A stretch of DNA of 64,000 nucleotides from IMG/VR virus record IMGVR_UViG_3300035698_035310, positions 186,001 through 250,000 of that record, one strand, 5' to 3'. Position numbers and translations under genes: made by a program. This document shows positions 7,829-62,807 of the stretch, one piece after another; position 1 is the stretch's first letter, and each line of letters opens with the position of its first letter. Below the pieces are notes generated by a model, which saw only the letters and a program-made list of their open reading frames with translations, made no database searches and was not told the DNA's origin.

Positions 7829-8480
7829 GTTGTTTCCTTTTGTTATTCCCACCTTAATTTAAACGCCATCATGTTAGTTTCACCCTTTATGTATAACACC
7901 GAATAGTCGTCGCTATCTCTCACAAACCATTCACCATTAACTAAATTCTCGCGGCACCATGCTGCGTAATCTAAAATATAATTATTGCCATCATCTACAT
8001 GAATGCGATACATGGTGTTATTATGACGATGTATGTCTAACATCTATAACCTCTATATGTATATCACTATCTTTGGCATGGTCGATTAATAAATTTATAT
8101 CTAAAAACCATTCATTGTTGGCTGATATATTGGTTATCAACGTTAAATATATTTCCAGTTCAACATTAAGCCCATGTTGAGCAGGTCTGTCGACGTATTC
8201 CGTCGCCACATCAATAAGCACCTAACGTTACAAGTAGGTCTTTCGCTGACATTTGTTCAAGTTTGGCGATACGTTCACGAACCAAATATGAAGCGACAAA
8301 CTCTACTATATCATCGCCCGGAACCTCGATTCTCTCCTCACCAACAATAACTGAAATATCACCAGATAAATCTGAGTTACAAATAAAACGTGTTTCACCA
8401 TGCTCATACGTATGTGACATGCAGTATCTCCTTATATTTCAGTTATGCATATTATATAACACATATGCGTATGGTGTCAA

Positions 8481-9029
8481 TTATTTTATCATCGCTTGTG
8501 CATGATCACTGCTATTTCCACAATACAATGTCGTGGGAGAACCATATAAAGACCAGCCATCCAATAGTGCCTCATTAACTGCATTTGTTATAGCAGAAGA
8601 ACTGGTTTCTGATAACAATTTATATTTTGTAAGTTTTGGTGTTTCATCATTGTCTGATTTAATATCAACATAATCAGGCATATCATCAGATGCGATCCAG
8701 CGACCTGCATCAATGCTGTAAAAATATGTTCCACACGCAAATGATTTATTGGTGTGAATAATTTCTATTGCAGTTTCTAATTCAATGTGTATTCTATCCA
8801 TTGAGATAGTTTGCTCTTTGGTAAACTCCGTGCCGCCATGTTGATCAGTCTTACCTTCGGGTTCGATGCCCAACATTTCTCCAATATCAAAGTATATTCG
8901 ATATCCAGAGTTTCCATATGGGCGCTTGGGATCAATTTTTACTGCACCATATGAATAACTATCATCATGCATGAATACGCTGTTAGCCAATAATGTTATA
9001 TGATCTTCCGTTAATTCAAATTCTCTCAT
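8481..9029 (-). CDS. two-domain protein with C-terminal DUF1737-like domain
   Basis: YKLL...VNEALLDGWSLYGSP pattern. Confidence 0.55.
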   Translation of the reverse strand: MREFELTEDHITLLANSVFMHDDSYSYGAVKIDPKRPYGNSGYRIYFDIGEMLGIEPEGKTDQHGGTEFTKEQTISMDRIHIELETAIEIIHTNKSFACGTYFYSIDAGRWIASDDMPDYVDIKSDNDETPKLTKYKLLSETSSSAITNAVNEALLDGWSLYGSPTTLYCGNSSDHAQAMIK

Positions 9030-33521: not shown

Positions 33522-35821
33522 TATGAAAAAACGTCCAATTGATATCAGGCGCGAAGGGCTTCATACGCAAGACCCTGCTATAACCTTGAAACAATTATTC
33601 GATTCTACCGATGGTGGATTGTGGGATCATAAAGGTGTTACTGACGCATGGGTATCATATAAGGATTCCAAAGGTCAACTGTATGGTAGCCATAAGTGCG
33701 TCCATGAGGTATGTATCGAAGGACGTGAATACAAAGTATCGCAATCTGCATTACCTAATTGGGGAATTCATATTTTGTTTACGGATGAAGTATATAAACC
33801 AAAAATAAATTATGTGACGCAAATGCGTTCATTAAATTTATTCATTAACTGTTAAAAAGGAGATTGATATGCAATTAGGCGATTCAGTTAAAGATTTAAC
33901 CGGCGACTTCGAGTTGGGTGAAATTATTGATATATATACGAACCGTCACGGCGACCATCCGGTTATTATGTATACGGTCGATTTTGGCGATGATAATGTA
34001 TTTGATCGATTGTTTCATGAAATAAGTGCTTGACTATTGGTTCAGTTATGTTAGATTAACTGTATTGAAATGAAAGGAAACATTATGGCTAAATCGATGT
34101 TTGAAGTTGAATGGATTTCGGAACAGGGTGGTGGACATACCATTTTGTCAGAAGAGGTTGCGGCGGAAGACGAAGGCGAGGCGATGGATGTTGCCTATGA
34201 TGATTATTATTTCTTGAAATTAATATCTGTAAATCATTTATATGACATTGAAGGAGAAACGCCGTGAAAACCAAAAAGATATATGTTACGATTGCGGTAG
34301 AAGTTAAAGAAGACTTCAATATGCAGAAAGCGTATACTGAAATGACATACGCGTTGGATCATGATGATATCGTCGGTACTGAAATCGTTGATGTTGAAAC
34401 ACAATTGAGTCGATATGGATGGGAGGACTGATATGCGCGGCACAAAACCATTAGCCCCTATGTCGAACTGGCACCGGTTGTTGACCATGTTGAGTTTGAA
34501 TGGTGGATCATTATACCGAGCACAACTGTATACTGCCAAACCTAAGATCAAAAAATATGTTGATCATGACGGCAATACCAAATATAAATCAATTCCAGCA
34601 AAAGACCTTCACACTTATATCGATACTGGCAAATTGCGCAAAGTGACTTGTGTATCATCATTTGCGCCATTGTCATATGCATATGAGCATCGGGCGGAAA
34701 GCATGGGATTGGTTCATATTAAAAAATTCAATAATCGCAAATGGATTACGTTGTTGCCAAAGGGACGTGCCGTGTTGGCGATGTTGGATGTTGGAAAGAA
34801 ATGGGTTCCAGAAACGAAAATTGAAAGGGAGTTTATTCGATGAGTAATATCTTTACAGCGCCGTTAGGGCTTGTATACGAAATCGACGATCAGAACTATA
34901 TCACTACTTCCGTGACTATGGACTTAAATGAGATCATCGATACCAACAACGAAGGGTTTCTTGATGCATTATCTATCTATGCTACAGATACTGAATTGTT
35001 AATGGATATTGATTATAAACTTCTGCGCATTGACGAACATGGTGCACTAGTGTTTAGAGTCCATGGCGATTTATCGGCGATCACAGATGACTGATAAACC
35101 AAAATCTAAACGGGGTCGAAAGAAAAAGGAACCGGAACCTCCTACCCCGACGAATTTGGTTCATTGTACATTGATGGCATGCGGCATGGTTCATCTTGAT
35201 CCAGCCAAGTGTCCCAAATGCGGCAATGATGATTCACAGCGCCCACTTAAGTTTGTAGGTGTTCCCATTTATATGACAATTGTTTAGGAGTAGCATATGA
35301 CTAAAATGATTTACACTGTAGTGCGCCGTCCCAAGGTTGGACGTCATGGGTTAACCACCATTGGGTGGGCGGAAGAATGTGGCAGAGAAGCGATTGTCAC
35401 GGGTGGTTATTTACATACTCGACGCACGTTACCGGGGGAACAAACTTATTACACGGCAATCATGACAAAAGCGAACTTTGATAGATGGCTCGGCGACAAA
35501 TTTGAAACCCGTGCACAAGCCGCGTTCGCTATATGGCGTCTATATTATAAAAATGAGCGTGCGAAACGTGATCAAGATAAAGCGAATGAAGCGAATGGAA
35601 AACATGCACGTGCGGTCGGGCGGAAACATAAACGCGAACATCGTGCGACGCCTGAAGGACAAGAAGAACGCCGGTTGATGTTAAATCGTAAAGCAAAAGA
35701 AAAGCGTGATAACATGACGGATGAACAGCGCAAGGCGATCAATGATAAACTTAAGAAACGTCGTGCGCATAAGAAAGAATTCGGTTGACATTGTGGAAAC
35801 ACTTGTTATATTAGTAACATC

Positions 35822-35895
35822 GGGGGCATAGCTCAGTGGTAGAGCAGTGGGTTCTAAACCCTTTGTCGGGAGTTCGACTCTCCCTGCCCTCGCCA
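35822..35895 (+). tRNA. tRNA with CUA anticodon (amber suppressor), Trp-like body
   Basis: Acceptor GGGGGCA/TGCCCTC, D arm GCTC/GAGC, anticodon loop TT-CTA-AA, T arm GGGAG-TTCGACT-CTCCC, G73 and encoded CCA; own TTGACA promoter at 35785. Confidence 0.92.
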
Positions 35896-35915
35896 AATTT
35901 TGAAAGGATATAATC

Positions 35916-36392
35916 ATGTCGGCAATTACTGATTTTTACCAAGGGTTCGGAACTGATGATAAAGGACGCTCACTTGATGATTACTTATTGTTCTCAGATG
36001 AACAATTAGAATCGGTTCATGATTATATCCAGTGGATGTTTCCCAACACGGAAGTCAGCCGATTTAATATCGATGCACCATTGCTTACAGATGCTGACAT
36101 TGAATTGTTTATGAATGACATACCAATGATGAACAATGTAACGTTGGCGTGTGCACGCATGACTAAATTTTATAAGTTTTCCAATATATATGTTGATGCA
36201 GAGAGACAATGGGTTACACAAGGCAATCATAATTTTTTACGACTTACTCGTATGTTGAAATTTCTTCGATCTATAAACAAAAATTATGAAGCAGAGTCGT
36301 TGTTTGTTATGCTTGCTAGAGTTTATTCAGATAATTCATTCGTGGTTGGCAAAGACACACTTCGGTATTGGTTGGACGCAGCAGAGAGTTAA
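35916..36392 (+). CDS. OGFr (opioid growth factor receptor) conserved-region domain protein
   Basis: LESVHDYIQWMFP...HNFLRLTRMLKFL. Confidence 0.85.
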   Translation: MSAITDFYQGFGTDDKGRSLDDYLLFSDEQLESVHDYIQWMFPNTEVSRFNIDAPLLTDADIELFMNDIPMMNNVTLACARMTKFYKFSNIYVDAERQWVTQGNHNFLRLTRMLKFLRSINKNYEAESLFVMLARVYSDNSFVVGKDTLRYWLDAAES

Positions 36393-36997: not shown

Positions 36998-39184
36998 ATG
37001 CAAATCAAAACAGAAAATCGAGAAGTTGGGCGTTCCGGCACTTCAAACGAACGGACGTTTAACATCGATATGACTGCCAAGGCATTTAAGATTCTATCCG
37101 ACGGATTGTATTCGGATAAAATTCTTGCTGTTGTTCGTGAACTTTCTTGTAATGCCAAGGATTCACATATCGACGCTGGCAAAAATGACGTGCCTTTCGA
37201 AATTCACCTACCGAATTCACTTGAGCCGTGGTTCGCGGTTACTGATTACGGACTTGGGTTATCACCTGACGATGTATTGGAAATGTATTCCACTTATTTT
37301 GCTTCAACCAAAACGGGTTCAAACGATGTAACGGGGTGTCTTGGACTTGGTTCTAAATCGCCTTTTGCTTATACCGATTCGTTTTCAGTTGAAACACGTT
37401 GGAATGGCACACTTACTGTATTTTCATGTTTCTATAACGAGGCAGGTATCCCCTCAATCGTTATTTTGGGTGACGAAGACGGAATGCCTACCGACGAAGT
37501 GAACGGCGTTACCGTTAAAATGGCTGTAAACGATGGTGACATGCGCGAATTCGCACAAAAGGCAATGAAGGCACTTGATCGCTTTGATCCTGCCCCTATC
37601 GTTACTGGTAACACTGATTATGAAATTGTTACTAAGACTTATACGGTTGAAGGCAAAGGCTGGAAGATGCTTGAACGTGAAAGTTCATATGGTGAAAGCA
37701 AAATCCATGCTATCCAAGGCAATGTAACATATCCAATTAGTTCACAATCATTAGGCGACTTGACAAGCAATCAAGATGCAATTATGGGATTGACAGTTGA
37801 TTTGTTCTTTGATATCGGCGAGTTGGACGTTGCGGCAAACCGCGAGGCGTTGGGTTATGATGAAGCAACGATTAAAAATATCAAGGCTAAACTTGATGCC
37901 GTATCGACTGAAATTGCCCCATTGTTTCAGGATAAATTTAAGGATTGTAAAACACTTTGGGATGCGCGTTTGTTGTTCAAAGAAGTGATCAATCCTTTGA
38001 CATCTGGCTTGCAACGGATTCTATCTGACAACAATGTTGGGTTGAAATGGAAAAAGCAATCACTATCTGATTCGTTCAAATTGGATCGCGATGATTTTCC
38101 TAACGTTCAGATTGTATCATTCCAAAAGAATACACGCGGTGGACGTGGGCAAACTGCGGAATGGAGTTATAACGGTGATATTAAATTCCCCGCCAGTTCC
38201 GATATTCTGTTTTTCTATGACGATGTTGGCAATGGTTCGCATAGCCGAGTGACTCATTTTATGGAAACAAATGGTGACTCTGTTCGTTATCAGCATATGT
38301 TCAAAACCGACGATAAAAAAATGATGAAAAAGATTTCTAAGGCGTTGGGTAATGTTACTATTCAACCTGTAAGCAATCTTGAAAAACGCCCCAAGGCTGT
38401 TCGCCAAGCGCGACGAGTTACATCAAAGGTTTTGGAATATGTTGGACGCGCCCATGATCGCCGTGATAGTTGGAATCCTACTGATCTGGATTTAACGACT
38501 GGTGGTGTTTATGTTATGATTGATCGCTTTAAGGTATATGATTCCAATAATGGTTCAGGACGTGAACGTGAAGATTTTAACACCATTGTCGATTTGGCGA
38601 AAGAACATAAAATCGTTGACTTGACTAACAAGATCGTTTATGGAATTCGTAAAGGTGATGTTGATAAATTGAAAGATGATTCTGGTTGGGTTAATCTTTT
38701 CGACCTGATCCGCGACAAACTTACGGTTGCGGTTAAAAAAGAAAAGGTGGCGCAAGTTATGGCTGACCGTTATGCCTATCACCAGTTTTCAAATGATTTA
38801 TCATCGTTCGTTAATGATATGGATGATACTGATTTGGCAAAGGATTCAGTTATTGGAATATTCAAACGCGCACATGAATATCTTTCAAACCGTGATTCAT
38901 CTAAGGCACAAGCGATTTCAAGTGTTGCGGATAGCGTAGGATTTACGTTAAAATCTGCCAAGCCAAAACACGATCTTGGGAAACTTTGGGACGCTGTTAA
39001 AAATAAGTATCCATTATTGAAACTTGTTTCTGACAGTGATTTGCGCGGCGGTTATTACAACAATCGCGACAACTCTATCAGTGAAAATAACCATGCGGCA
39101 TTGACTGATTATATCGCGATGGTTGACGCAAAAGACGCAGTGCCAGAAAAGCGTAAAATCCTTACGTTGGCCTCGGCGGCATAA
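36998..39184 (+). CDS. rIIA: rIIA protein (GHKL ATPase N-terminus)
   Basis: LSDGLYSDKILAVVRELSCNAKDSH...TDYGLG...STK...GCLGLGSKSPFAYT; directly upstream of rIIB. Confidence 0.9.
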   Translation: MQIKTENREVGRSGTSNERTFNIDMTAKAFKILSDGLYSDKILAVVRELSCNAKDSHIDAGKNDVPFEIHLPNSLEPWFAVTDYGLGLSPDDVLEMYSTYFASTKTGSNDVTGCLGLGSKSPFAYTDSFSVETRWNGTLTVFSCFYNEAGIPSIVILGDEDGMPTDEVNGVTVKMAVNDGDMREFAQKAMKALDRFDPAPIVTGNTDYEIVTKTYTVEGKGWKMLERESSYGESKIHAIQGNVTYPISSQSLGDLTSNQDAIMGLTVDLFFDIGELDVAANREALGYDEATIKNIKAKLDAVSTEIAPLFQDKFKDCKTLWDARLLFKEVINPLTSGLQRILSDNNVGLKWKKQSLSDSFKLDRDDFPNVQIVSFQKNTRGGRGQTAEWSYNGDIKFPASSDILFFYDDVGNGSHSRVTHFMETNGDSVRYQHMFKTDDKKMMKKISKALGNVTIQPVSNLEKRPKAVRQARRVTSKVLEYVGRAHDRRDSWNPTDLDLTTGGVYVMIDRFKVYDSNNGSGREREDFNTIVDLAKEHKIVDLTNKIVYGIRKGDVDKLKDDSGWVNLFDLIRDKLTVAVKKEKVAQVMADRYAYHQFSNDLSSFVNDMDDTDLAKDSVIGIFKRAHEYLSNRDSSKAQAISSVADSVGFTLKSAKPKHDLGKLWDAVKNKYPLLKLVSDSDLRGGYYNNRDNSISENNHAALTDYIAMVDAKDAVPEKRKILTLASAA

Positions 39185-39340
39185 GAAACTCCTACCTAGC
39201 CCGTAGGTGGCAGGGTTGAACGGTGATTGACTTCTTCTGTTTAATCCTGCCAAACTAATTTGAAATGAGTGCTTGACAATATAACAAATGGTGGTAATAT
39301 TCATTATCACATTCGGAAACCAACTAGGAGACTAAAACTT

Positions 39341-40492
39341 ATGAAAACGATTCAAGCCGCAATTATCGCCCAAAATTCAATCACACTTATGATTGACGGG
39401 CAAACTACGCCTATCGCCTCTTCGCATACAAACTATGAAGAAATTCGTGGACTTGCTGCCGCTGGCAACTATGCACCAATTGCATCATTGCTTGATATGG
39501 TTCAGGTTATTAACGACTTTGGTAAAGGACGCGTTACCGTTGAAAACGGTGAAGTTCTTTATGATGGTAAGCCTACCCATAACGCGGTGACTTCGCGTAT
39601 CCTTCAAATGGTTGAAGAAGGTTTGGAAGTTTCACCAATGGTTGCATTCCTTGATAACCTTATGGATAACCCTTCATTCCGTTCCGTTCAACAGTTATAC
39701 GGTTTCTTGGAAGTGAACGACCTTCCGATCACGGAAGACGGTTTCTTTCTTGCCTATAAAATGTGCGCCGAGGTTAATGGTAAATTGACTGATATTCGCA
39801 CGCAAACGTTTGATTATAGCGTTGGCGCAAAACCTGCCGAAATGCCACGTAACGAAGTGAACGAAGACCCTGATCAAACTTGTTCTTCTGGTTTGCACGT
39901 ATGCGCCCAAGGTTATCTTGGTTCATACAGTTCTGGCGAACATACGATTTTGGTTAAAGTTAATCCTGCCGATGTTGTTGCAGTTCCGACTGACTACAAT
40001 AACGCCAAAATGCGGGTAAGCAAACATGAAACCGTTTGTAAGGTTACTGCGCGAACTCGCGGTGCTGTATATACCAGTGCGGTTTATACCCCTTCGGCGG
40101 ATTCAAAAAGCACACTGGTAAATGGCGATGATTTGCTTACGCTGGATGAAGCAGTTGACGTTCTTGGGCTTAAGGGTGCTAAAAATCCAATTGCCGCACT
40201 ACGTAAGCGCCTATCGCGTGCAAAGCTGACTTCTAACCCTAAACTCAAGTCGGTTTTCAAAGATGGTGTTGAAATGATTCAAATCATCCAAACGGAGGCC
40301 GACGATGTTGAAGTTGCTGACGATTCGGTTATGACTCACGTTGATGCAATCGCATACTTTGCCAAGCAAAACAAAGCCAATGGCAAGGCACAACCAGCCG
40401 ACCCGAAAGCGGCATTGCGTAAAATGCTTAATCGTGAATCTGCTTGCAAGCGCGTTTACGTTGATGGTGTTGAGATGATCAAAATTCTTTAA
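39341..40492 (+). CDS. rIIB: rIIB protein with a duplicated C-terminal extension
   Basis: FLDNLMDNPS.RSV.QLYGFL....LPITEDG.FLAYK...MPRNEV.EDP.QTCS.GLHV...VKVNPADVV.VP.DYNNAKMR. Confidence 0.92.
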   Translation: MKTIQAAIIAQNSITLMIDGQTTPIASSHTNYEEIRGLAAAGNYAPIASLLDMVQVINDFGKGRVTVENGEVLYDGKPTHNAVTSRILQMVEEGLEVSPMVAFLDNLMDNPSFRSVQQLYGFLEVNDLPITEDGFFLAYKMCAEVNGKLTDIRTQTFDYSVGAKPAEMPRNEVNEDPDQTCSSGLHVCAQGYLGSYSSGEHTILVKVNPADVVAVPTDYNNAKMRVSKHETVCKVTARTRGAVYTSAVYTPSADSKSTLVNGDDLLTLDEAVDVLGLKGAKNPIAALRKRLSRAKLTSNPKLKSVFKDGVEMIQIIQTEADDVEVADDSVMTHVDAIAYFAKQNKANGKAQPADPKAALRKMLNRESACKRVYVDGVEMIKIL

Positions 40493-42298: not shown

Positions 42299-42769
42299 AT
42301 GTTCGAACTTAAAATCACAGACTTGAAAGACGCACCCACGATTGGGTTGGGTTGGGCAACTAAAACAGTTAGCCTGCTTGATACATCTGGTATTGCGAAT
42401 CCATTCTTTGGTGAAGGACATCAAAAGTTTTTCATGGACGATCTTGATAATGAAAAACAAGAATGTCATCGTCCCGGAATGCAACACGCACCCAAAATGA
42501 AAGACATCCTGAATATACTTACATTCACGGAAACTTTCACCGATGAAGACAAAGTATTGATTCATTGTCATGGCGGCATGTGTCGTTCCCCCGCTGTATC
42601 CATGTTGGCGTTGATTCAACATGGTATGACTAAAGAAGACGCGTTTAAAATGGTTATGGAAGTTCGTCCCGTGGCAATGACAAATTACCTTGTTATCCGA
42701 TTGGGTGATGTAGCCTTGGGTTTGAATGGCGAACTAATTCAGTTTATGAATGGAATTGATTTTGATTAG
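42299..42769 (+). CDS. protein tyrosine/dual-specificity phosphatase-like protein
   Basis: CX5R loop LIHCHGGMCRSPA; VRP.A..N downstream. Confidence 0.85.
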   Translation: MFELKITDLKDAPTIGLGWATKTVSLLDTSGIANPFFGEGHQKFFMDDLDNEKQECHRPGMQHAPKMKDILNILTFTETFTDEDKVLIHCHGGMCRSPAVSMLALIQHGMTKEDAFKMVMEVRPVAMTNYLVIRLGDVALGLNGELIQFMNGIDFD

Positions 42770-43045: not shown

Positions 43046-43558
43046 ATGATTCCAAACCTTACCAGCGATGGTGACAATTGGGTCAATGGTTCGATTGGTG
43101 TGTTTAAAATTTGCGCCAAAGTTTTTTCTGAACCATCAGTTTTTGGTATCAAGAATGGACGCATTAGCAAATTGCAAGTGTGCGATACTTCACAATTACA
43201 TTGGGGTTTTGATGGTTGTTATTTGAATTATGACCGTGGTTGGGATATGCGCCCAAAGAATGAACCAGAACGTAAGTTCTTAAATGACTTGCTTACTGCA
43301 TTCGGCGATGATATCATGGAAGGCGACGACTATGTTTGGTATGACCTTTATGGTTATGCAGATCAAGCCGCGTTTGATCGGTTAGATCGCGAACATTTGA
43401 TGTCAGTTGATACCAAAAACGAGGCGCTTGAAGAAGCGCAAGGTTACATCAAACATGATGACGCATTTGATATCATCAAAGTTCGATGTTCCGATGATGA
43501 AGACGATGACGAAGTTATCTTGAAAAAAGACTTGACGGAAAAGGCGGTTGCTGTATAA
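43046..43558 (+). CDS. hypothetical protein
   Basis: W..G....KVFSEPS.FGI..GRISKL...NYDRGWD; its stop overlaps the -10 of the next promoter. Confidence 0.65.
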   Translation: MIPNLTSDGDNWVNGSIGVFKICAKVFSEPSVFGIKNGRISKLQVCDTSQLHWGFDGCYLNYDRGWDMRPKNEPERKFLNDLLTAFGDDIMEGDDYVWYDLYGYADQAAFDRLDREHLMSVDTKNEALEEAQGYIKHDDAFDIIKVRCSDDEDDDEVILKKDLTEKAVAV

Positions 43559-43564
43559 TACAAT

Positions 43565-44150
43565 TATTGAATTCGCCCGAAAGGGCACACGAGTTGCTAG
43601 GACCACGGTGTGTATACGCACTGAATAGAACAGAGGTTCTAACCCTCTGAATTCCAGTTAGGTTTGCTGGATTATGGAATAGCCGACATGCGACGGTATG
43701 GTCTGGTGAAATCATAATAGTTCAATAGCATTAAATTTGTTACGCTGGAACTGAAATGAAGGCGTTACTATGGGAAGCCATTTAAGGTGAGTGGTTCAGT
43801 GCTTAACGAAGATGATATGTCTGGAGTGGTCCAGTGAAAATAGGACGAGTCAAAACGTCAACATATTAGCTTCCCGAATTAATTATTGCTGGTAAGGTTC
43901 TGCTCAAGCGTTCATAGCGTAGAGATAAACTGCAAAAGATGATAAAATCCGTAAGGAGTTTGTTCCACTTGTAGTGAATGATGGTTCGGGTATTAGTAGT
44001 GCCCTTATGCAAAGTGCAAATCCCATCACAGCAAAACATAGTTAATATCGTTGAACTCTATCCTATTGGAAGGTGAAACTGAAATCCGTATGGCAAAGTA
44101 ATCGATTTAGATCATGCGAAGTTATTAGGTTACGATATTATTAGTTAAAT
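43565..44150 (+). ncRNA. large structured RNA, unit A (about 590 nt)
   Basis: Promoter TTGACG 43532/TATAAT 43554; nested helices 43565-71/43721-27, 43772-78/43869-75, 43886-91/44029-34, 44043-51/44132-40; GNRA hairpins; no ORF of 60 aa or more on the plus strand. Confidence 0.7.
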
Positions 44151-44189
44151 AATGCTTGACAGTTTATGTATGTTGAGGTATTATAAAGA

Positions 44190-44860
44190 ATAGAATGTGA
44201 TGGAAGGTTGGTATCTTCTTCGGTGGCACAAACCACGGGTAGCTTAAATACCAGAACGTAAGTTCAGAAAAGCACATTCCCTAAGTTTAGGTTAAAAGCA
44301 TCGAGGCGTAGTGGCTGGTAGGTGTTATAACCTTAGCGAAATGTAGCGGCACTGGTTGGGTTTACACGACTTGGCAAAGACTGCATCAGAGTAGCTTGAA
44401 ATGGGTGGTGCCGATACGAAGGCAGATGATATAGGGAGTGCGCACAAACTATATTATTTCATGCGGAGCATGGACACGCAGGATTTGCCCAAATGGGCAC
44501 ACGAGCTTGCGATAGTGTACGATGCACGACGTACCTAGAATACAGCCGGTAGTGAGCCAGTAAAGTTACACTCACAAGGAGGTTGCTAGGACATTTAATG
44601 ATGTAACACATTGAATGTATATGGGTTAACCATTGAAGCAGAGTGGGTTTAATTCCTACGCGCATTTCCAATTCCCGAAAGGGAATACGACGTTGGTATG
44701 TTGATCGTCGGCAAATACATCGGCACCCGTGTTAACCTTGGAGTACACGTTAAATAAATCCAAGGGATAGGTTCGCCCTATGCCCGATGATTCTACAGGG
44801 AAATGGTTGTTGAATCACTTGTGTAGAGAACCCCCCTCTGCTAATACCAACCAAAAAATA
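44190..44860 (+). ncRNA. large structured RNA, unit B (about 670 nt)
   Basis: Promoter TTGACA 44156/TATTAT 44179; helices 44193-99/44273-79 and 44638-43/44836-41; H-type pseudoknot 44728-65; GNRA hairpins; shares motifs with unit A. Confidence 0.7.
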
Positions 44861-45420
44861 TAGGGAGCGTGGCTGAAATGTAGCAAATCAGGTGTGTCAC
44901 GTAAGTTAATCTACTGAAAATTTGTTGCCCCTGCCTAAGTGGGTTAATTGGGTTTTATAGAAAAGTAGTATATAATATGTAGGGAATTTGCGAAAGAACG
45001 TAAGTGGAGCCGATACAAGTGATAGGAAATTAGACCTTGACGTGGACGCTAAGAAGTTTACAATCTGAATTTCAAAACAATTCATCGTGGTGATACTTAA
45101 CACCAGTAGAACAAATAACAGTAAGGAACGATGGAGCCGGATATCCATGCTATAAAAAACCGGCATACTTATTCGCCCGAATGGGCAAACAGTTTTGGAT
45201 TAAATGGGCGTAGCTCATTAGCGGTGAAGACGTAAGTGCTTCTTTATTAAGAAACGCATAAGTGACATTCGCGATGTCATGGGGTGAAATCCCTCAATCC
45301 AAATTTAACTATACGCAGGGCAATCCCGTAAGACGTAAGTGTTTCCAAATCACAAGACCTCCTTTCGTTAAATATTGTGATTGAATGAAGCCCCATCAGC
45401 ATCCAGCGGTGGGGTTTTGT
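44860..45420 (+). ncRNA. structured RNA, unit C, with a tRNA-like T-loop subdomain and terminator
   Basis: ATTCGCCCGAATGGGCA (45171) is nearly identical to 43571; 8-bp helix 45194-201/45296-303 enclosing GGGGTGAAATCCC; terminator-like hairpin 45390-45420; boundaries uncertain. Confidence 0.5.
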
Positions 45421-46102
45421 TTTTCCAATCATGCTCCCACATAACGACAAGATTATAACCCGAATCTTTAATAAGTGTTTCTTTTTTAAGTGTATTCTCA
45501 TATAGATGTTTGAACGGTTGTTTATTTGATGGATTTAGTTTGGTATGATCGGTGGTATTTGGATTACCATGCCAATAATCGCCGTGAAATTCATAAACCG
45601 TATTAGTCGTTGGATTATAACCATCCACTATGAATTGATTTATTTTAACTTGGCGATGATTTCTATCATTTGGAAGACCGATTGCATCAAGCCATTTTGT
45701 TTCTGATTTAGAAACATTATTGGTGCATTTTGCACAACCGCGACCTGATATATGATCTGTTGGGCGTTGCGTAAAGATACCATGTTTTTTGCATATTATA
45801 TTAATATTTGTTCGTTTATTAACATATATAGATTGTGAATAGTCATATTTACCACTGTGTGCAATATTGGATAAGATAATAAATTCATTCAATGTTCTTG
45901 TTTGTGTGATATTGCAACACTTATTGCATCCAATGCTACGTATATGATCGGCTGCACGTTGTTCAAATATACCATGATCGTCGCATATTATTTTTATTTT
46001 AGAATGTGAATGACTATATTCAACTAATGAATAATCATATACATCACCGTGAACGGCGATAGCTTCTTGTATGAATTTAGTGGTGGTTTTTCTTCTTGAC
46101 AT
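45368..46102 (-). CDS. free-standing endonuclease (DUF723-like repeats plus Vsr-like domain)
   Basis: YDYS.VEY....KIKIIC..HG.FEQ...DH...GC..C twice; VDGY...YEFHGDYWHGNP...MWEHDW. Confidence 0.85.
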   Translation of the reverse strand: MSRRKTTTKFIQEAIAVHGDVYDYSLVEYSHSHSKIKIICDDHGIFEQRAADHIRSIGCNKCCNITQTRTLNEFIILSNIAHSGKYDYSQSIYVNKRTNINIICKKHGIFTQRPTDHISGRGCAKCTNNVSKSETKWLDAIGLPNDRNHRQVKINQFIVDGYNPTTNTVYEFHGDYWHGNPNTTDHTKLNPSNKQPFKHLYENTLKKETLIKDSGYNLVVMWEHDWKNKTPPLDADGASFNHNI

Positions 46103-47715: not shown

Positions 47716-48366
47716 TTAGAATGTCATGCAATTTTCTATGACTCGAAGTTGAACATTTCCTAAACTGCGATGTCTGGTTTGTTTTAGGTTGAGTTTGAAT
47801 TTAATATCATCACTTTCTTCTAAGACTTTAGCAAACAGTTCGGGTTGCATTGTTAATCCAATATACAATAACCGCATAGTGCTTAATATCTTTCTTATTG
47901 GTTTGTCGAGTACAACTATTTCCTTGCCGGTAATAAGTGCGATAAACTTATCAAGGTTCATACAACCACGCACTGAGTTGCATTCGGAACAAGCCATAGC
48001 AAAGTTATGCTTGAAATTAGAACCACCTTTTGTCCTTGCAACAACATGTTCAACCGTGGCGCGGTTAGTGTCGTGGTGTGGAATCGCATCACCGTCGTCC
48101 AGTTTTGGATACCACATTGGGTCACCACAATAGCAGCATCTATGATTTTGTGCTTCTAATAATTTGATATTGCGGCGGCGGAGAAATCGAGTATTTCTAC
48201 CGCGTTTATTTTTACGCGTATTTTCTTTAGTTTTTTCTACGTTGCCACCATTAGCCGCATCATTCTCGAGACGTAGCGCACGCACTTCTTCGAGAGACAT
48301 GCCTTTTTCTCGCTCACGTTTGTGTTTTCGTTTTTCGGTTCGTCTGAGTTTTCCTAATGGTGTCAT
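47716..48366 (-). CDS. HNH endonuclease
   Basis: CCYCG...ATVEHVV....GGSN...N.AMAC.ECN..RG. Confidence 0.85.
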   Translation of the reverse strand: MTPLGKLRRTEKRKHKREREKGMSLEEVRALRLENDAANGGNVEKTKENTRKNKRGRNTRFLRRRNIKLLEAQNHRCCYCGDPMWYPKLDDGDAIPHHDTNRATVEHVVARTKGGSNFKHNFAMACSECNSVRGCMNLDKFIALITGKEIVVLDKPIRKILSTMRLLYIGLTMQPELFAKVLEESDDIKFKLNLKQTRHRSLGNVQLRVIENCMTF

Positions 48367-61473: not shown

Positions 61474-62198
61474 TCGGATATTTTATCGCTATCGTTTTTG
61501 CCTTGACACTTGTGTTGTTTGGTTCTATAACTGTAACCAACGACGCCGAGACGTGTGTCAAGGCGGAACGCGAGATTTACATGACCTGCACTGAAAGGTA
61601 ATACAATGGATTTTACTGGAATATTTTACTTACTTGTCGTGATGTATAATTTGTTTATGCTTTGGAATATATCTGCTTACAGTTTTTCCGCGTTCGTGAT
61701 ATACAAAGTGCCGACATTTTTAATCGCGGGTGGTATGCTTTGGCTTGCGTTGACCCATTTCGGTTTTCTTATACAGGTGGGATAATGTATTTTCTTGGCG
61801 GCATAGTTGCGCTATTGCCTTGGTTGGGGGGTGTCTACCATGTAATCGTAGCACCCAAACCTGAAAAAAAGAAACGAGAGAAAAACGAACATCTTTCGAT
61901 GTGTTATCCAAACCCATCTACAACTATAATTCGTGCTTCAAGATATACATCGTTCATGATAGTTCGTGAACACGATGAAACATACACTGTTTATGAATGC
62001 AGGCACCTTACCAAACTTCGAGCAAACATGAATAGTAAATTGAGGTGCGGCAACAAATTAACCGCCGAAGGTGCTAGAGCACTTGTAACTGCATTAAGCA
62101 TTGAAAGCGAATGGGTCGATACACCAATAGTATTCGATTAGTGCTTGACAGTGGTTCAGTTAGTTGCTATAACAAGGCAACAGATAAAGGACAATCAA

Positions 62199-62807
62199 AT
62201 GAAAACGCTTCGTAAAAAACTTCTTGAACTTGAACAGATAAATGTTGATCTGCACAAACTCAAAGCACCCATCGATAAGAAACTTAAAAAGAATTGGGAA
62301 GCGATCAAAGTCGTCAGAAAATCTATTGATGAAGAAGACATTGCGACAATGCTCAAGTTAGGCGTTGATTGGAAATTTCTTTTGAAACCGGCTAATGATT
62401 TTGGCAGTACCGAGATGTATAATTATTTCGACACCCAAGTGCATGAATTGGGAATGCATTCCGGCGGACGCTGGAGAGACACGCGACAGCCAGTGGTGTC
62501 AATCATGCTAACACATGGCGACGAGAAAAGCCTTATGAATAACATCGCAGGAGTTAAACTTCTTTCACCGTTTTATGAACAGGTTGACGGTGCGGTTCCG
62601 TTTGCAATATTTGATCATGGTTTGTCAGAATATGCAGTATATTCAATGACTTATAACCCAACAACCAATGAAGTTATTCTAAAGACATTGCGTCATGGCA
62701 GAACCGAAGAGAATTTCCTTGGGGCGTTGCCGGATGCTATGAAGCACATACAAGATCATCATTGGTATGATGGGAAAGAAGAAGATCATGACGACGATGA
62801 TTATTAA
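62199..62807 (+). CDS. hypothetical protein (start re-assigned to MKTLRK)
   Basis: AAGGA RBS; promoter with GGTTCAGTTA box upstream. Confidence 0.7.
   Translation: MKTLRKKLLELEQINVDLHKLKAPIDKKLKKNWEAIKVVRKSIDEEDIATMLKLGVDWKFLLKPANDFGSTEMYNYFDTQVHELGMHSGGRWRDTRQPVVSIMLTHGDEKSLMNNIAGVKLLSPFYEQVDGAVPFAIFDHGLSEYAVYSMTYNPTTNEVILKTLRHGRTEENFLGALPDAMKHIQDHHWYDGKEEDHDDDDY

What the first reader, a model, noticed from the sequence alone, without database searches (positions are those of the whole stretch)
43565..45420. 1.85-kb cluster of apparently paralogous giant structured RNAs with their own promoters
Seen: in an otherwise gene-dense region, this stretch has no plus-strand ORF of 60 aa or more. 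It has two near-consensus promoters (43532/43554 and 44156/44179) and a terminator-like end. It contains many nested perfect helices (43565/43721, 43772/43869, 43886/44029, 44043/44132, 44193/44273, 44638/44836, 45194/45296), GNRA-capped hairpins (GCCC-GAAA-GGGC, TCC-GTAA-GGA, GAAC-GTAA-GTTC, ATTCCC-GAAA-GGGAAT), T-loop-like GTGCAAAT/GTGAAAT motifs and an H-type pseudoknot (44728-65). Modules recur between units: GCCC-N4-GGGCA three times (43575, 44487, 45175), GGGCACACGAG twice, GTTGCTAGGAC twice (43593, 44582). Established: phages carry large ornate RNAs such as ROOL (about 600 nt) and GOLLD (about 800 nt) of unknown function. Inference: two or three related giant RNAs in tandem, possibly a new class or a hetero-oligomeric RNA assembly.
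Basis: partly seen in the sequence, partly recalled or inferred. Interest (0 to 1): 0.88.

Follow-up and report, generated by a model that had tools for sequence, protein, structure and literature searches.

The report
Modular structured-RNA array in a jumbo phage
A 1.85-kb protein-free stretch of a giant T4-like phage encodes a chain of about ten separately folding RNA domains, conserved in about a dozen related phages and matching no described RNA family; one of its loops copies the ribosome's anti-Shine-Dalgarno sequence.

Summary
Window 43559-45367 has no credible ORF on either strand or under any single stop reassignment. It has two near-consensus early-type promoters and ends in an intrinsic terminator. 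No Rfam 15 family matches it.

Syntenic promoter-to-terminator non-coding units of about 0.6 to 2.3 kb exist in about 12 related metagenomic phage contigs. Compensatory base changes support many helices, including three H-type pseudoknots.

The "paralogous giant RNAs" reading is only partly right. What recurs is a roughly 23-nt punctuation hairpin (AUUC-GCCC-N4-GGGC-AnACGAG) that separates different 80-200-nt domains. Between phages these domains are reordered, duplicated, inserted or deleted, and some have their own promoters. This fits an array of independent modules better than one global fold.

In all six independent relatives that reach the 3' end, the last module is a hairpin with a different stem in each phage. 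Its 15-nt loop is invariant (CCUCCUUUCGUUCAA; the window has A for the last C) and is complementary to the phage's AAAGGA ribosome-binding sites.

The most likely function, which is inferred, is an early-expressed cassette processed into stable decoy or regulatory RNAs, the last one acting on Shine-Dalgarno pairing. It is a new RNA class whose function is untested.

The parts
43532..43559 (+). Promoter P1 (TTGACG-16-TATAAT). The predicted start, near 43566, lies just before the first punctuation hairpin. The promoter overlaps the stop codon of the upstream DUF7678 gene.
   Evidence: 11 of 12 positions. It resembles the AAAAAAGnnCTTGACA promoters that open the homologous loci in relatives.
43571..43593 (+). 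Punctuation hairpin copy 1: AUUC-GCCC-GAAA-GGGC-ACACGAG.
   Evidence: The 4-bp stem is kept while the loop varies (GAAA, GAAU, GAGA, GUGA, UAAU, UUCG). L085 has a compensatory GCCU/AGGC version.
43595..43730 (+). Domain U1a, a multi-branched fold. It is closed by UGCU/AGCA and contains one hairpin plus a four-way junction.
   Evidence: 41 pairs, 19 with compensatory double changes across 4 copies (window, L080 twice, L084). The covariance-model search found full-length copies only in these phages.
43746..43878 (+). Domain A3, closed by GGGAAGC/GCUUCCC (43772-78 / 43863-69).
   Evidence: Collinear with L080 7550-7737. The closure is conserved in L080. Only two sequences are available, so support is weak.
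43879..44036 (+). Domain A4, closed by UUGCUG/CAGCAA. It contains the conserved internal loop GUGAAUGA...AAGUGCAAAUCCC (the G motif, about 43968-44025).
   Evidence: AAGUGCAAAUCCC is invariant in 5 phages. The GAAGG/CCUUC stem becomes GAUGG/CCAUC in the window. In L081 and L083 this module lies after Z rather than before it.
44037..44145 (+). Domain A5, closed by a 9-bp helix UAAUAUCGU/ACGAUAUUA (44041-49 / 44131-39).
   Evidence: 26 pairs, 5 with double changes in 3 sequences (window, L080, L096).
44156..44184 (+). Internal promoter P2 (TTGACA-17-TATTAT). The predicted start is near 44191.
   Evidence: It matches the phage's early promoter pattern perfectly. Internal promoters also exist in L080 (8055-83) and L088 (2952-80).
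44188..44285 (+). Domain B1, closed by GAAUGUG/CACAUUC. It contains a GAAC-GUAA-GUUC hairpin. No homologue was found in other phages.
   Evidence: There is no comparative support.
44286..44396 (+). Domain B2 (CAUCGAGGCGUAGUGGCUGGUAGGUG...).
   Evidence: Homologous to L080 8320-8425 and to L081/L082. In L081/L082 it lies near the 5' end of the unit.
44397..44668 (+). Insert B3, absent from L080. It carries punctuation hairpin copy 2 (44483-44505) followed by a weak U1a-like domain.
   Evidence: L080 joins 8425 directly to 8433. The U1a model scores 20 bits at 44478-44621. There is weak similarity to L088 2246-2500.
44669..44856 (+). Domain B4, made of four elements:
- a variant punctuation hairpin, AUUCCC-GAAA-GGGAAU (44671-86);
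- pseudoknot 1 (S1 44689-92/44706-09; S2 44699-705/44719-25);
- pseudoknot 2 (S1 44728-32/44745-49; S2 44736-41/44760-65);
- a hairpin GUAGAG...CUCUGC.
   Evidence: compensatory changes:
- Pseudoknot 1 S1: GACG/CGUC in the window, GGCG/CGCC in L080 and L095, GGCU/AGCC in L088.
- Pseudoknot 1 S2: UGUUGAU/AUCGGCA in the window, UGUUGGU/ACCAACA in L080.
- Pseudoknot 2 S1: CGUG/CACG becomes AGUG/CACU in L088.
- Pseudoknot 2 S2: CCUUGG/CCAAGG becomes CCUUGA/UCAAGG in L088.

Folding z = -5.1 for 44190-44860.
44857..45078 (+). Domain B5. It starts with the conserved AAAAAAUAnAGGGAGCGUGGCUGAA and contains the helix CGUGGC/GUCACG.
   Evidence: The helix covaries: CGAGGC/GCCUCG in L081, CAGGGC/GCCCUG in L083, CGGGGC/GCCCCG in L085. 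B5 together with Z makes up the 266-nt cassette present in L081 and absent from L082.
45079..45193 (+). Module Z, made of three elements:
- hairpin UGGUG/CACCA (45088-92 / 45101-05);
- an H-type pseudoknot (S1 45131-35/45144-48; S2 45136-40/45160-64; A-rich third loop);
- punctuation hairpin copy 3 (45171-93).
   Evidence: There are nine distinct copies in seven phages, and all can form both pseudoknot stems. Compensatory changes:
- UGGUG/CACCA to UGGCG/CGCCA;
- AUGGA/UCCAU to GUGGA/UCCAC and GUGGG/CCCAC;
- GCCGG/CCGGC to GCCAG/CUGGC.
45194..45340 (+). Domain B7, closed by UUUGGAUU/AAUCCAAA. It holds two AAGACGUAAGUG repeats and a GGGGUGAAAUCCC element that resembles the G motif.
   Evidence: It aligns only poorly with L080. 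There is no covariation evidence.
45348..45382 (+). Anti-Shine-Dalgarno hairpin: stem AUCACAA/UUGUGAU presenting the loop (A)CCUCCUUUCGUUAAA (core 45358-45369).
   Evidence: Six independent phages have six different 7-8-bp stems around the same loop, CCUCCUUUCGUUCAA. The loop is complementary to the AAAGGA-type ribosome-binding sites that dominate in this phage.
45389..45420 (+). Intrinsic terminator (GCCCCAUC...GGUGGGG followed by UUUUGUUUUU). It lies inside the 3' end of the converging HNH gene on the other strand.
   Evidence: Equivalent strong terminators end the unit in L080, L081, L083, L092 and L095.

Best explanation
Window 43532-45420 is a non-coding cassette driven by two host-type (sigma-70-like) early promoters and closed by one intrinsic terminator.

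**Architecture.** The transcript or transcripts form a chain of about ten independently folding domains of 80-200 nt. These are multi-branched folds and H-type pseudoknots with many C-GUAA-G loops. A recurrent element, AUUC-GCCC-N4-GGGC-AnACGAG, joins several of them (three canonical copies and one variant in the window). The domains behave as evolutionary cassettes. Related phages carry different subsets, orders and copy numbers, and sometimes place a promoter in front of a single domain.

**Proposed mechanism (inferred, not shown).**
- The long early transcripts are cut at the A/U-rich stretch just 5' of each punctuation hairpin, for example by host RNase E.
- Each released RNA then begins with a protective 5' stem-loop and accumulates as a stable small RNA.
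- Each domain binds its own host or phage partner, acting as a decoy or regulator during host takeover.
- The 3'-most product is the hairpin plus terminator. It displays a copy of the 16S rRNA anti-Shine-Dalgarno tail and either pairs with AAAGGAGG-type ribosome-binding sites or titrates a factor that recognises that tail.
For: **Non-coding.**

**A discrete transcription unit.**
- Promoters.
- Terminator.
- Relatives have the same promoter-to-terminator layout, followed by a fresh promoter for whichever gene comes next.

**Conserved in a clade.** About 12 contigs were found through the neighbouring DUF7678 gene and a Z-module pattern. L080 shares 67-76% nucleotide identity with most of the region.

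**Covariation.**
- U1a: 19 of 41 pairs.
- Z hairpin and pseudoknot.
- Both B4 pseudoknots and the B5 helix.
- A5.
- M0, the opening module that the relatives have and the window lacks.
- Anti-SD hairpin.

**Modularity.**
- Order differs between phages: G before T before a before Z in L080, but a, T, Z, G in L081.
- There are 1 to 3 Z copies.
- Clean 266-nt and roughly 275-nt cassette indels exist.
- L080 has a promoter inserted after U1a.

**Punctuation hairpin.** It occurs 1 to 5 times per locus, always in the same orientation, with structure kept and loop free to vary.

**Anti-SD loop and ribosome-binding sites.**

**Tertiary-contact signature.** C-GUAA-G occurs 7 times against 0.5 expected.
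Against: - There are no expression data, so transcripts, their ends and any processing are all inferred.
- The single-sequence minimum-energy fold of the window is not better supported by L080 than shifted controls are. Two of three segments have unremarkable folding z-scores. The structure claim therefore rests on module-level comparisons, several with only 2-6 sequences.
- Three window segments (B1, most of B3, B7) have no homologue and no comparative support.
- No target of the anti-SD loop was found in the window beyond ordinary ribosome-binding sites. The same loop would also pair with the phage's own sites.
- The host is unknown.
- Enriched GNRA loops and a conserved receptor-like internal loop could mean the domains dock on each other. 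That would favour a large folded particle over independent pieces.
Confidence: 0.55

Rival explanations
1. Two or three giant RNAs, each with one global three-dimensional fold, possibly assembling into RNA-only particles as GOLLD, ROOL and OLE do. The variable domains would be peripheral decorations on a conserved core.
For: - Total size, two promoters and one terminator.
- C-GUAA-G tetraloops enriched about 14-fold.
- An invariant internal loop, AAGUGCAAAUCCC, that could act as a tetraloop receptor.
- Strong folding z-score for 44190-44860 with a 9-bp long-range closure.
- GOLLD and ROOL are also phage-borne and form homo-oligomers (PMC12286853, listed).
Against: - No common core in a fixed order: modules are permuted between phages.
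- Near-identical phages differ by a whole cassette.
- The smallest unit is only about 0.6 kb.
- Promoters sit between domains in some phages.
- The long-range closure in the window uses a repeated GUUGGUAU and is not conserved in L080 or L095.
- No match to any large-RNA model.
Confidence: 0.22
2. The punctuation hairpins are cis-acting transcription signals resembling nut/boxB or the rrn antitermination sites. They would load a factor on RNA polymerase so that it reads through the many structured, terminator-like segments. On this view the hairpins are not processing sites.
For: - GCCC-GAAA-GGGC resembles lambda boxB (GCCCUGAAAAAGGGC, from my own knowledge).
- The first copy lies about 9 nt after the predicted start in the window.
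- Copies recur along the unit, as antitermination signals do in rrn operons.
- A stem followed by a U-run, which looks like a terminator, lies inside the units of several relatives.
Against: - The loop is free to vary, including UUCG and UAAU. A boxB-type reader of a GNRA-like loop would not tolerate this.
- No boxA-like sequence and no N-like arginine-rich protein was seen nearby.
- T4-like phages are not known to use this mechanism (my own knowledge).
Confidence: 0.07
3. A DNA-level element, such as a replication origin, packaging site or operator array, in which the repeated GCCC-N4-GGGC palindromes are protein-binding sites.
For: Three or four palindromic repeats in an ORF-free stretch. 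Palindromes also keep compensatory changes.
Against: - All copies have asymmetric conserved flanks in one orientation.
- G-U pairs occur in the hairpin (L081 GCCC/GGGU) and throughout the other helices.
- Pseudoknots covary.
- The unit is bracketed by a promoter and a terminator.
- No base-composition anomaly stands out in the profile.
Confidence: 0.03
4. Hidden coding sequence: small ORFs, minus-strand ORFs, or a gene read through recoded stop codons. This is prompted by the amber-suppressor tRNA elsewhere in the window.
For: - Minus-strand ORFs of 66-86 aa in the window and up to 122 aa in L080.
- A tRNA with anticodon CUA at 35822-35895.
Against: - All three stop codons are frequent in every plus-strand frame, and reassigning any one stop opens no long frame.
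- No codon periodicity, and indels are almost never multiples of three, unlike the flanking gene.
- The ATG in module M0 of the relatives is not conserved, and its helices covary.
Confidence: 0.02

Closest known systems
GOLLD and ROOL (large ornate RNAs, often phage- or prophage-borne)
   Same: Long, protein-free and richly structured, with pseudoknots and GNRA loops. Carried by phages, and biological function unknown.
   Different: - No covariance-model match even at E <= 10.
- GOLLD and ROOL have a fixed core architecture. Here the domains are permuted, duplicated and deleted between relatives, are separated by a punctuation hairpin, and can have their own promoters.
Phage T4 tRNA-cluster stable RNAs (rnaC species 1, rnaD species 2)
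   Same: A T4-like phage makes a polycistronic transcript that yields small stable RNAs of about 120-140 nt whose function is still unknown. A homing endonuclease gene sits next to or inside the cluster.
   Different: - No tRNA genes lie in or beside this locus.
- No sequence or structure similarity: the U1a model scores 6 bits or less across the T4 cluster.
- The locus lies downstream of rIIB, in a different genomic position.
Flavivirus 3'UTR / sfRNA module arrays (tandem xrRNA and dumbbell elements)
   Same: A viral non-coding RNA built from tandem pseudoknotted modules whose number and order differ between related viruses. It is thought to act as a decoy or sponge.
   Different: A eukaryotic RNA virus with no sequence relationship. 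Exonuclease resistance is the defining property there and is untested here.
Small RNAs with C/U-rich loops that pair with Shine-Dalgarno sequences (RsaE/RoxS, S. aureus RNAIII hairpins)
   Same: An invariant pyrimidine-rich loop complementary to ribosome-binding sites, presented on a hairpin directly before a Rho-independent terminator.
   Different: Here the loop is a 15-nt copy of the anti-SD tail (CCUCCUUUC...) rather than a UCCC box. It lies at the end of a 0.6-2.3-kb structured transcript and is phage-encoded. No target is known.
Type III toxin-antitoxin RNA arrays (ToxI) and phage pseudo-ToxI
   Same: Tandem pseudoknotted RNA units cut from a precursor. Phages can carry mimics of them as an anti-defence measure.
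   Different: ToxI units are near-identical repeats of about 36 nt next to a ToxN gene. Here the units are heterogeneous, 80-200 nt long, and have no endoribonuclease partner nearby.

Membership tests
GOLLD / ROOL / OLE / HEARO and every other Rfam 15 family | Match to the family covariance model at or near the gathering score. | tested here: not met
   - Whole window at gathering threshold: only a tRNA at 35822.
- Region at E <= 10: two chance-level hits of 16-18 bits against thresholds of 55-80.
- Seven related loci at E <= 1: nothing in the homologous regions.
GOLLD / ROOL-type single giant RNA | Conserved core helices in a fixed 5'-to-3' order in all members. | tested here: not met
   Module order differs between L080 or the window and L081 or L083. 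Cassette indels separate near-identical phages. Unit size ranges from about 0.6 to 2.3 kb.
tmRNA / tRNA-like RNAs | A tRNA-like domain detected by ARAGORN or Rfam, and a tag reading frame for tmRNA. | tested here: not met
   ARAGORN finds none in the region or in 8 related loci. Rfam finds none.
Conserved structured RNA (general) | Helices maintained by compensatory substitutions across homologues. | tested here: met
   - U1a: 19 of 41 pairs.
- Z.
- B4 and B5.
- A5.
- M0.
- Anti-SD hairpin with six different stems.

Caveat: there are only 2-9 sequences per module, and no R-scape statistics were run.
H-type pseudoknot | Two stems in crossing topology, both kept across homologues. | tested here: met
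   The Z pseudoknot forms 9-10 of 10 pairs in all nine copies, with double changes in both stems. Both B4 pseudoknots show double changes in both stems.
Intrinsic (Rho-independent) terminator | A GC-rich hairpin followed directly by a U-run, at the end of the unit. | tested here: met
   Window 45389-45420. Equivalent terminators occur in L080, L081, L083, L092 and L095.
SD-occluding small RNA (RsaE/RoxS/RNAIII type) | An invariant pyrimidine-rich loop complementary to SD sequences, on a hairpin next to the terminator. | tested here: met
   The phage's ribosome-binding sites are mostly AAAGGA.
SD-occluding small RNA (RsaE/RoxS/RNAIII type) | Demonstrated pairing with and repression of target mRNAs. 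| not testable with these tools
   The host is unknown. Only generic ribosome-binding-site-like matches were found in the window.
CsrB/RsmZ-type protein sponge | Many GGA motifs in hairpin loops. | tested here: not met
   GGA occurs 29 times against 34.5 +/- 4.8 in shuffles.
Type III antitoxin RNA array (ToxI-like) | Near-identical short tandem repeats next to a ToxN-type endoribonuclease gene. | tested here: not met
   No such tandem repeats. The neighbours are rIIA, rIIB, a DSPc-like phosphatase, DUF7678 and an HNH endonuclease.
Protein-coding gene (standard or recoded) | An open frame, 3-nt substitution periodicity and in-frame indels. | tested here: not met
Lambda-type nut / boxB antitermination site | A GNRA-like loop of conserved sequence read by an N-type protein, with an adjacent boxA. 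| tested here: not met
   The loop varies freely, including UUCG and UAAU. No boxA-like element was seen. Protein binding cannot be tested here.

The most novel reading that the evidence does not exclude
The locus is an evolvable plug-in rack of RNA decoys. Each 80-200-nt domain would neutralise or redirect a different host factor. The punctuation hairpin would be the universal processing and stabilising joint that lets cassettes be swapped between phages. The terminal module would be a mimic of the 16S rRNA 3' tail that reprograms or protects translation initiation. This would make it an RNA-only counterpart of the protein anti-defence and host-takeover islands of T4-like phages.
Probability: 0.2. 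Interest if true: 0.9.

Novelty: new variant of a known kind. Interest (0 to 1): 0.74.

Why it matters
Large structured phage RNAs such as GOLLD and ROOL are among the least understood RNAs, and few classes are known. This locus adds a class with a different organising principle, in which independent pseudoknotted and multi-branched domains are strung together by a common joint and shuffled between phages.

It also offers an unusually concrete functional handle. An invariant loop copies the ribosome's anti-Shine-Dalgarno sequence, which can be tested directly by toeprinting, reporter assays and pull-downs.

If the modules prove to be decoys, this would extend RNA-based host takeover and anti-defence well beyond pseudo-ToxI and RNA anti-CRISPRs. 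If instead they dock into one particle, it would be a new natural RNA architecture for structural study.

Tried and rejected
**Searches that found nothing**
- Rfam at gathering and at permissive thresholds, on the window and on related loci.
- BLAST of the region and of 20 kb around it against 50,697 phage records.
- A motif scan of IMG/VR with the punctuation hairpin returned only chance hits and the window's own contig. The Z-module pattern found only the window's own contig in IMG/VR.
- A DUF7678-profile scan of IMG/VR and of GTDB genomes found only distant homologues. In the 1.78 Mb of loci fetched up, those carried no punctuation-hairpin cluster, no Z module and no anti-SD loop. The GTDB loci were not scanned for the RNA.
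- Six literature searches found no description of the locus or of DUF7678.

**Ideas tested and dropped**
- Stop-codon recoding.
- CsrA-sponge idea: GGA is not enriched.
- Kinship with T4 rnaC and rnaD.
- K-turn reading of the punctuation hairpin. By inspection, the non-bulged strand lacks the required GA.
- Intramolecular partners for the anti-SD loop. The AAGGAGG at 44577 lies in a window-only insert, and the AGGGAG at 44861 is not conserved as a complement.
- Resemblance of GUAAGUCGUAAGG (L081, L083) to 16S AAGUCGUAACAAGG, and of ACGAG...AGGACC to the sarcin-ricin loop. Both were noted and judged likely coincidence.

**Methods that gave no usable signal**
- Using the window's single-sequence minimum-energy fold as the test structure gave no signal above shifted controls. 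It was replaced by module-level alignments.
Full report
**Where the window comes from.** The window is part of IMGVR_UViG_3300035698_035310, a 359-kb viral contig. The same sequence lies on a 570,750-bp JGI contig. It encodes rIIA (36998-39184) and rIIB (39269-40492) and several HNH endonucleases, so it is a T4-like jumbo phage. It has no nucleotide-level relative among 50,697 deposited phage genomes.

**Checking the observation.**
- Between the stop of a DUF7678 gene (43046-43558) and the stop of a converging HNH gene (45368-46102, minus strand), the longest plus-strand ORF is 45 aa.
- Every plus-strand frame holds 8-19 copies of each stop codon, and reading any one stop as sense opens no long frame. 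This matters because the window carries a tRNA with anticodon CUA at 35822-35895.
- Minus-strand ORFs of 66-86 aa exist. In the alignment with the homologous region of L080, however, substitutions fall evenly on the three codon positions (43/49/51 and 32/44/54). Only 1 of 31 indels is a multiple of three. The adjacent DUF7678 gene, aligned the same way, shows a strong third-position excess and only in-frame indels. The stretch is therefore non-coding.
- The two promoters each match 11 of 12 positions. The second is a perfect instance of TGCTTGACA-N17-TAnnnT, a pattern found 36 times in the window against 9 expected, so it belongs to the phage's own early promoter class.
- The region ends in a GC-rich hairpin plus U-run.
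- The recurring motifs are real. TTCGCCC-N4-GGGCA occurs three times against 0.1 expected.
- Folding energy alone is significant only for 44190-44860 (z = -5.1). The flanking thirds give -1.6 and -1.2.

**Known families.** Rfam 15 gives no match at gathering thresholds or at E <= 10. This holds for the region and for the homologous regions of seven related loci. ARAGORN finds no tRNA or tmRNA there.

**Relatives.**
- The upstream DUF7678 protein has homologues of 50-63% identity in metagenomes.
- Fetching their contigs gave a syntenic series: rIIB, a conserved 178-aa gene, a DSPc-like phosphatase, DUF7678, a few small genes, then an ORF-free gap.
- A pattern derived from one module added two more contigs. 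About 12 distinct phages result.
- L080 is 67-76% identical to most of the window region. The others share pieces.
- In each relative that is complete, the gap opens with a conserved promoter (L080 6911-38, L081 7638-66, L083 7990-8018, L088 2011-38). It closes with a strong terminator, after which a new promoter serves whichever gene follows.
- The downstream gene differs between phages: PTH2 in L081 to L083, another gene in L080, and a reversed HNH in the window and apparently L095. The RNA is therefore not a leader for a particular gene.
- Unit lengths run from about 0.6 kb (L082) to 2.2 kb (L080).
- No member of this clade is in IMG/VR apart from the window's own contig, and none is in GTDB genomes. 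The 1.78 Mb of loci fetched up, which encode more distant DUF7678 or rIIB homologues, carry none of the RNA signatures.

**Structure, module by module.**
- **Domain U1a (43595-43730)** has four copies in three phages. Its consensus fold has 41 pairs, 19 of which show compensatory double changes. It is a closing helix, one hairpin and a four-way junction.
- **Module Z (45079-45193)** has nine distinct copies in seven phages, with up to three in tandem in L092.
  - Its first hairpin switches between UGGUG/CACCA and UGGCG/CGCCA.
  - The loop of the next stem pairs with a downstream CCGGC to form an H-type pseudoknot with an A-rich third loop.
  - Both pseudoknot stems show double changes, and all nine copies can form 9-10 of 10 pairs.
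- **Domain B4 (44669-44856)** contains two more pseudoknots. In L088 its stems change from CGUG/CACG to AGUG/CACU and from CCUUGG/CCAAGG to CCUUGA/UCAAGG. The first pseudoknot covaries in L080, L088 and L095.
- **Other helices** that covary are the B5 helix (four versions), the A5 closing helix and the opening module M0 of the relatives.
Five of the seven long-range helices coincide with domain closures. The two others, 43565/43721 and 44638/44836, compete with covarying helices.
- **A caution.** The window's single-sequence minimum-energy fold, taken as a whole, is no better supported by L080 than shifted controls are. The evidence is at module level, sometimes from very few sequences. B1, most of B3 and B7 have no comparative support.

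**The punctuation hairpin.**
- What recurs inside the window is a roughly 23-nt element, AUUC-GCCC-N4-GGGC-A(n)ACGAG, and not whole RNAs.
- It occurs one to five times in every related locus, always on the plus strand.
- The stem is kept: L085 has GCCU/AGGC and L081 has a G-U closing pair. The loop is GAAU, GAAA, GAGA, GUGA, UAAU or UUCG.
- It sits at joints between different domains. In the window it lies right after the P1 start, inside the window-specific insert, in variant form at the start of B4, and at the end of Z.
- A covariance model of hairpin plus U1a finds the hairpin in many places but full-length U1a only in three phages.

**Modular architecture rather than a global fold.**
- The G motif lies before the T, a (the window's B2) and Z modules in L080 and the window, but after Z in L081 and L083.
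- L081 and L082 are identical over about 720 nt except for a clean 266-nt block, B5 plus Z.
- The window has a roughly 275-nt insert (44397-44668) where L080 joins the flanks directly.
- L080 has a promoter inserted after U1a, and an internal promoter followed by a terminator-like stem.
- A single RNA with one conserved core would not tolerate this. An array of independent units explains it.
- Against that view, C-GUAA-G loops are 14-fold enriched (7 against 0.5). The invariant internal loop AAGUGCAAAUCCC could be a tetraloop receptor. Docking between domains, or between molecules, therefore remains possible.

**The terminal hairpin.**
- In all six independent phages whose sequence reaches the 3' end, a hairpin lies 5-25 nt before the terminator.
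- Its 7-8-bp stem is different in every phage: AUCACAA, GGGCGC, GAUGGG, CGAUGGG, GAGGCGC and AAAUCGCC.
- Its loop is invariant, (A)CCUCCUUUCGUUCAA.
- CCUCCUUUC is the anti-Shine-Dalgarno tail of 16S rRNA in many bacteria (established knowledge).
- The phage's own ribosome-binding sites are mostly AAAGGA (41 of 86 upstream regions contain AGGA), and these are complementary to the loop.
- The design is an invariant single-stranded loop on a covarying stem next to a terminator. Base-pairing small RNAs that occlude Shine-Dalgarno sequences have this design.
- No specific target was found, and the host is unknown.

**Most likely mechanism.**
- Shown: a conserved, non-coding, multi-domain structured RNA locus with early-type promoters and a terminator; modular evolution; a punctuation hairpin; and an anti-SD loop.
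- Inferred: host RNA polymerase transcribes the cassette immediately after infection. The precursor is cut in the A/U-rich stretch 5' of each hairpin, where ...GA|AUUC fits the RNase E preference (my own knowledge). The products begin with a protective stem-loop and act separately as decoys or regulators. The 3' product acts on SD/anti-SD pairing.
- I put about 0.9 on the architecture being real, about 0.6-0.7 on independent modules rather than one particle, and about 0.3 on the SD-pairing role.

**Comparison with known systems.**
- The locus works most like a polycistronic stable-RNA cluster such as the T4 tRNA/rnaC/rnaD cluster, or a viral multi-module decoy RNA such as flavivirus sfRNA. Its end resembles a C/U-rich-loop small RNA.
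- It is not a member of GOLLD, ROOL, tmRNA, introns, ToxI arrays or CsrB-type sponges. The defining features were tested and not met.
- Six literature searches found no description of it.

**Verdict.** The finding is real and is a new class of phage structured RNA. The interpretation should change from "paralogous giant RNAs" to [quoted passage not shown]. Function is untested.

Noticed in passing
window 35822-35895 (+): A tRNA with anticodon CUA (amber suppressor; ARAGORN labels it tRNA-Pyl). TAG is still the rarest stop among long ORFs (10 of 66).
   Followed up: partly
window 61650-62807 (+): The only TAG-bridged pair of long ORFs in the window: pieces of 163 and 222 codons in one frame, separated by a single TAG. 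An early-type promoter at 62142-62173 lies at the junction, so these may simply be two genes.
   Followed up: partly
window, whole (e.g. 6109, 25132, 32463, 44153, 56678): The pattern TGCTTGACA-N17-TAnnnT occurs 36 times against 9 expected, mostly on the plus strand. It appears to be this phage's early promoter class.
   Followed up: partly
window 45368-46102 (-) and 47716-48366 (-): Free-standing HNH endonuclease genes. The first converges on the RNA unit, and its last 50 nt or so overlap the terminator and the anti-SD hairpin on the other strand. L095 shows the same sequence after its terminator, while other relatives have different genes there.
   Followed up: partly
window 42299-42769 (+); L074-L086, L097: A dual-specificity-phosphatase-like gene (Pfam DSPc, weak match) is always found one or two genes upstream of the RNA unit. 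Some enzymes of this fold are RNA 5'-phosphatases (my own knowledge). A link to the RNA is pure speculation.
   Followed up: no
L081 8582-9076, L082 7999-8493, L083 9132-9656: In three relatives, a PTH2-type peptidyl-tRNA hydrolase is the first gene after the RNA unit. It is absent at that position in the window and in L080.
   Followed up: no
L081 7495-7629, L084 6269-6403, L085 3884-4018, L088 1877-2005 and others: A conserved hydrophobic 42-50-aa ORF (ending ...PFF or ...PFFG) directly precedes the RNA unit in most relatives. It is absent from the window, where the unit starts right after DUF7678.
   Followed up: partly
L081 7889-7971; L080 8089-8167; L088 2985-3073; L084 6867-6926: A conserved element, CCAAGGG-[two small hairpins]-CCCUUGG-UUUUUAUUCCC, looks like an internal terminator or attenuator. 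In L080 and L088 it follows an internal promoter by about 30 nt, which would give an RNA of about 85 nt. The window lacks it.
   Followed up: partly
window 35774-35919: The U1a covariance model gives a marginal hit (13 bits, E 0.04) over the tRNA. It is probably a chance match between two branched folds.
   Followed up: no
L081 ~8405-8420, L083 ~8975-8990: GUAAGUCGUAAGG lies about 30 nt upstream of the anti-SD loop. It recalls the 16S sequence AAGUCGUAACAAGG, which precedes the anti-SD tail at a similar distance. The equivalent of helix 45 is missing, so this may be coincidence.
   Followed up: no
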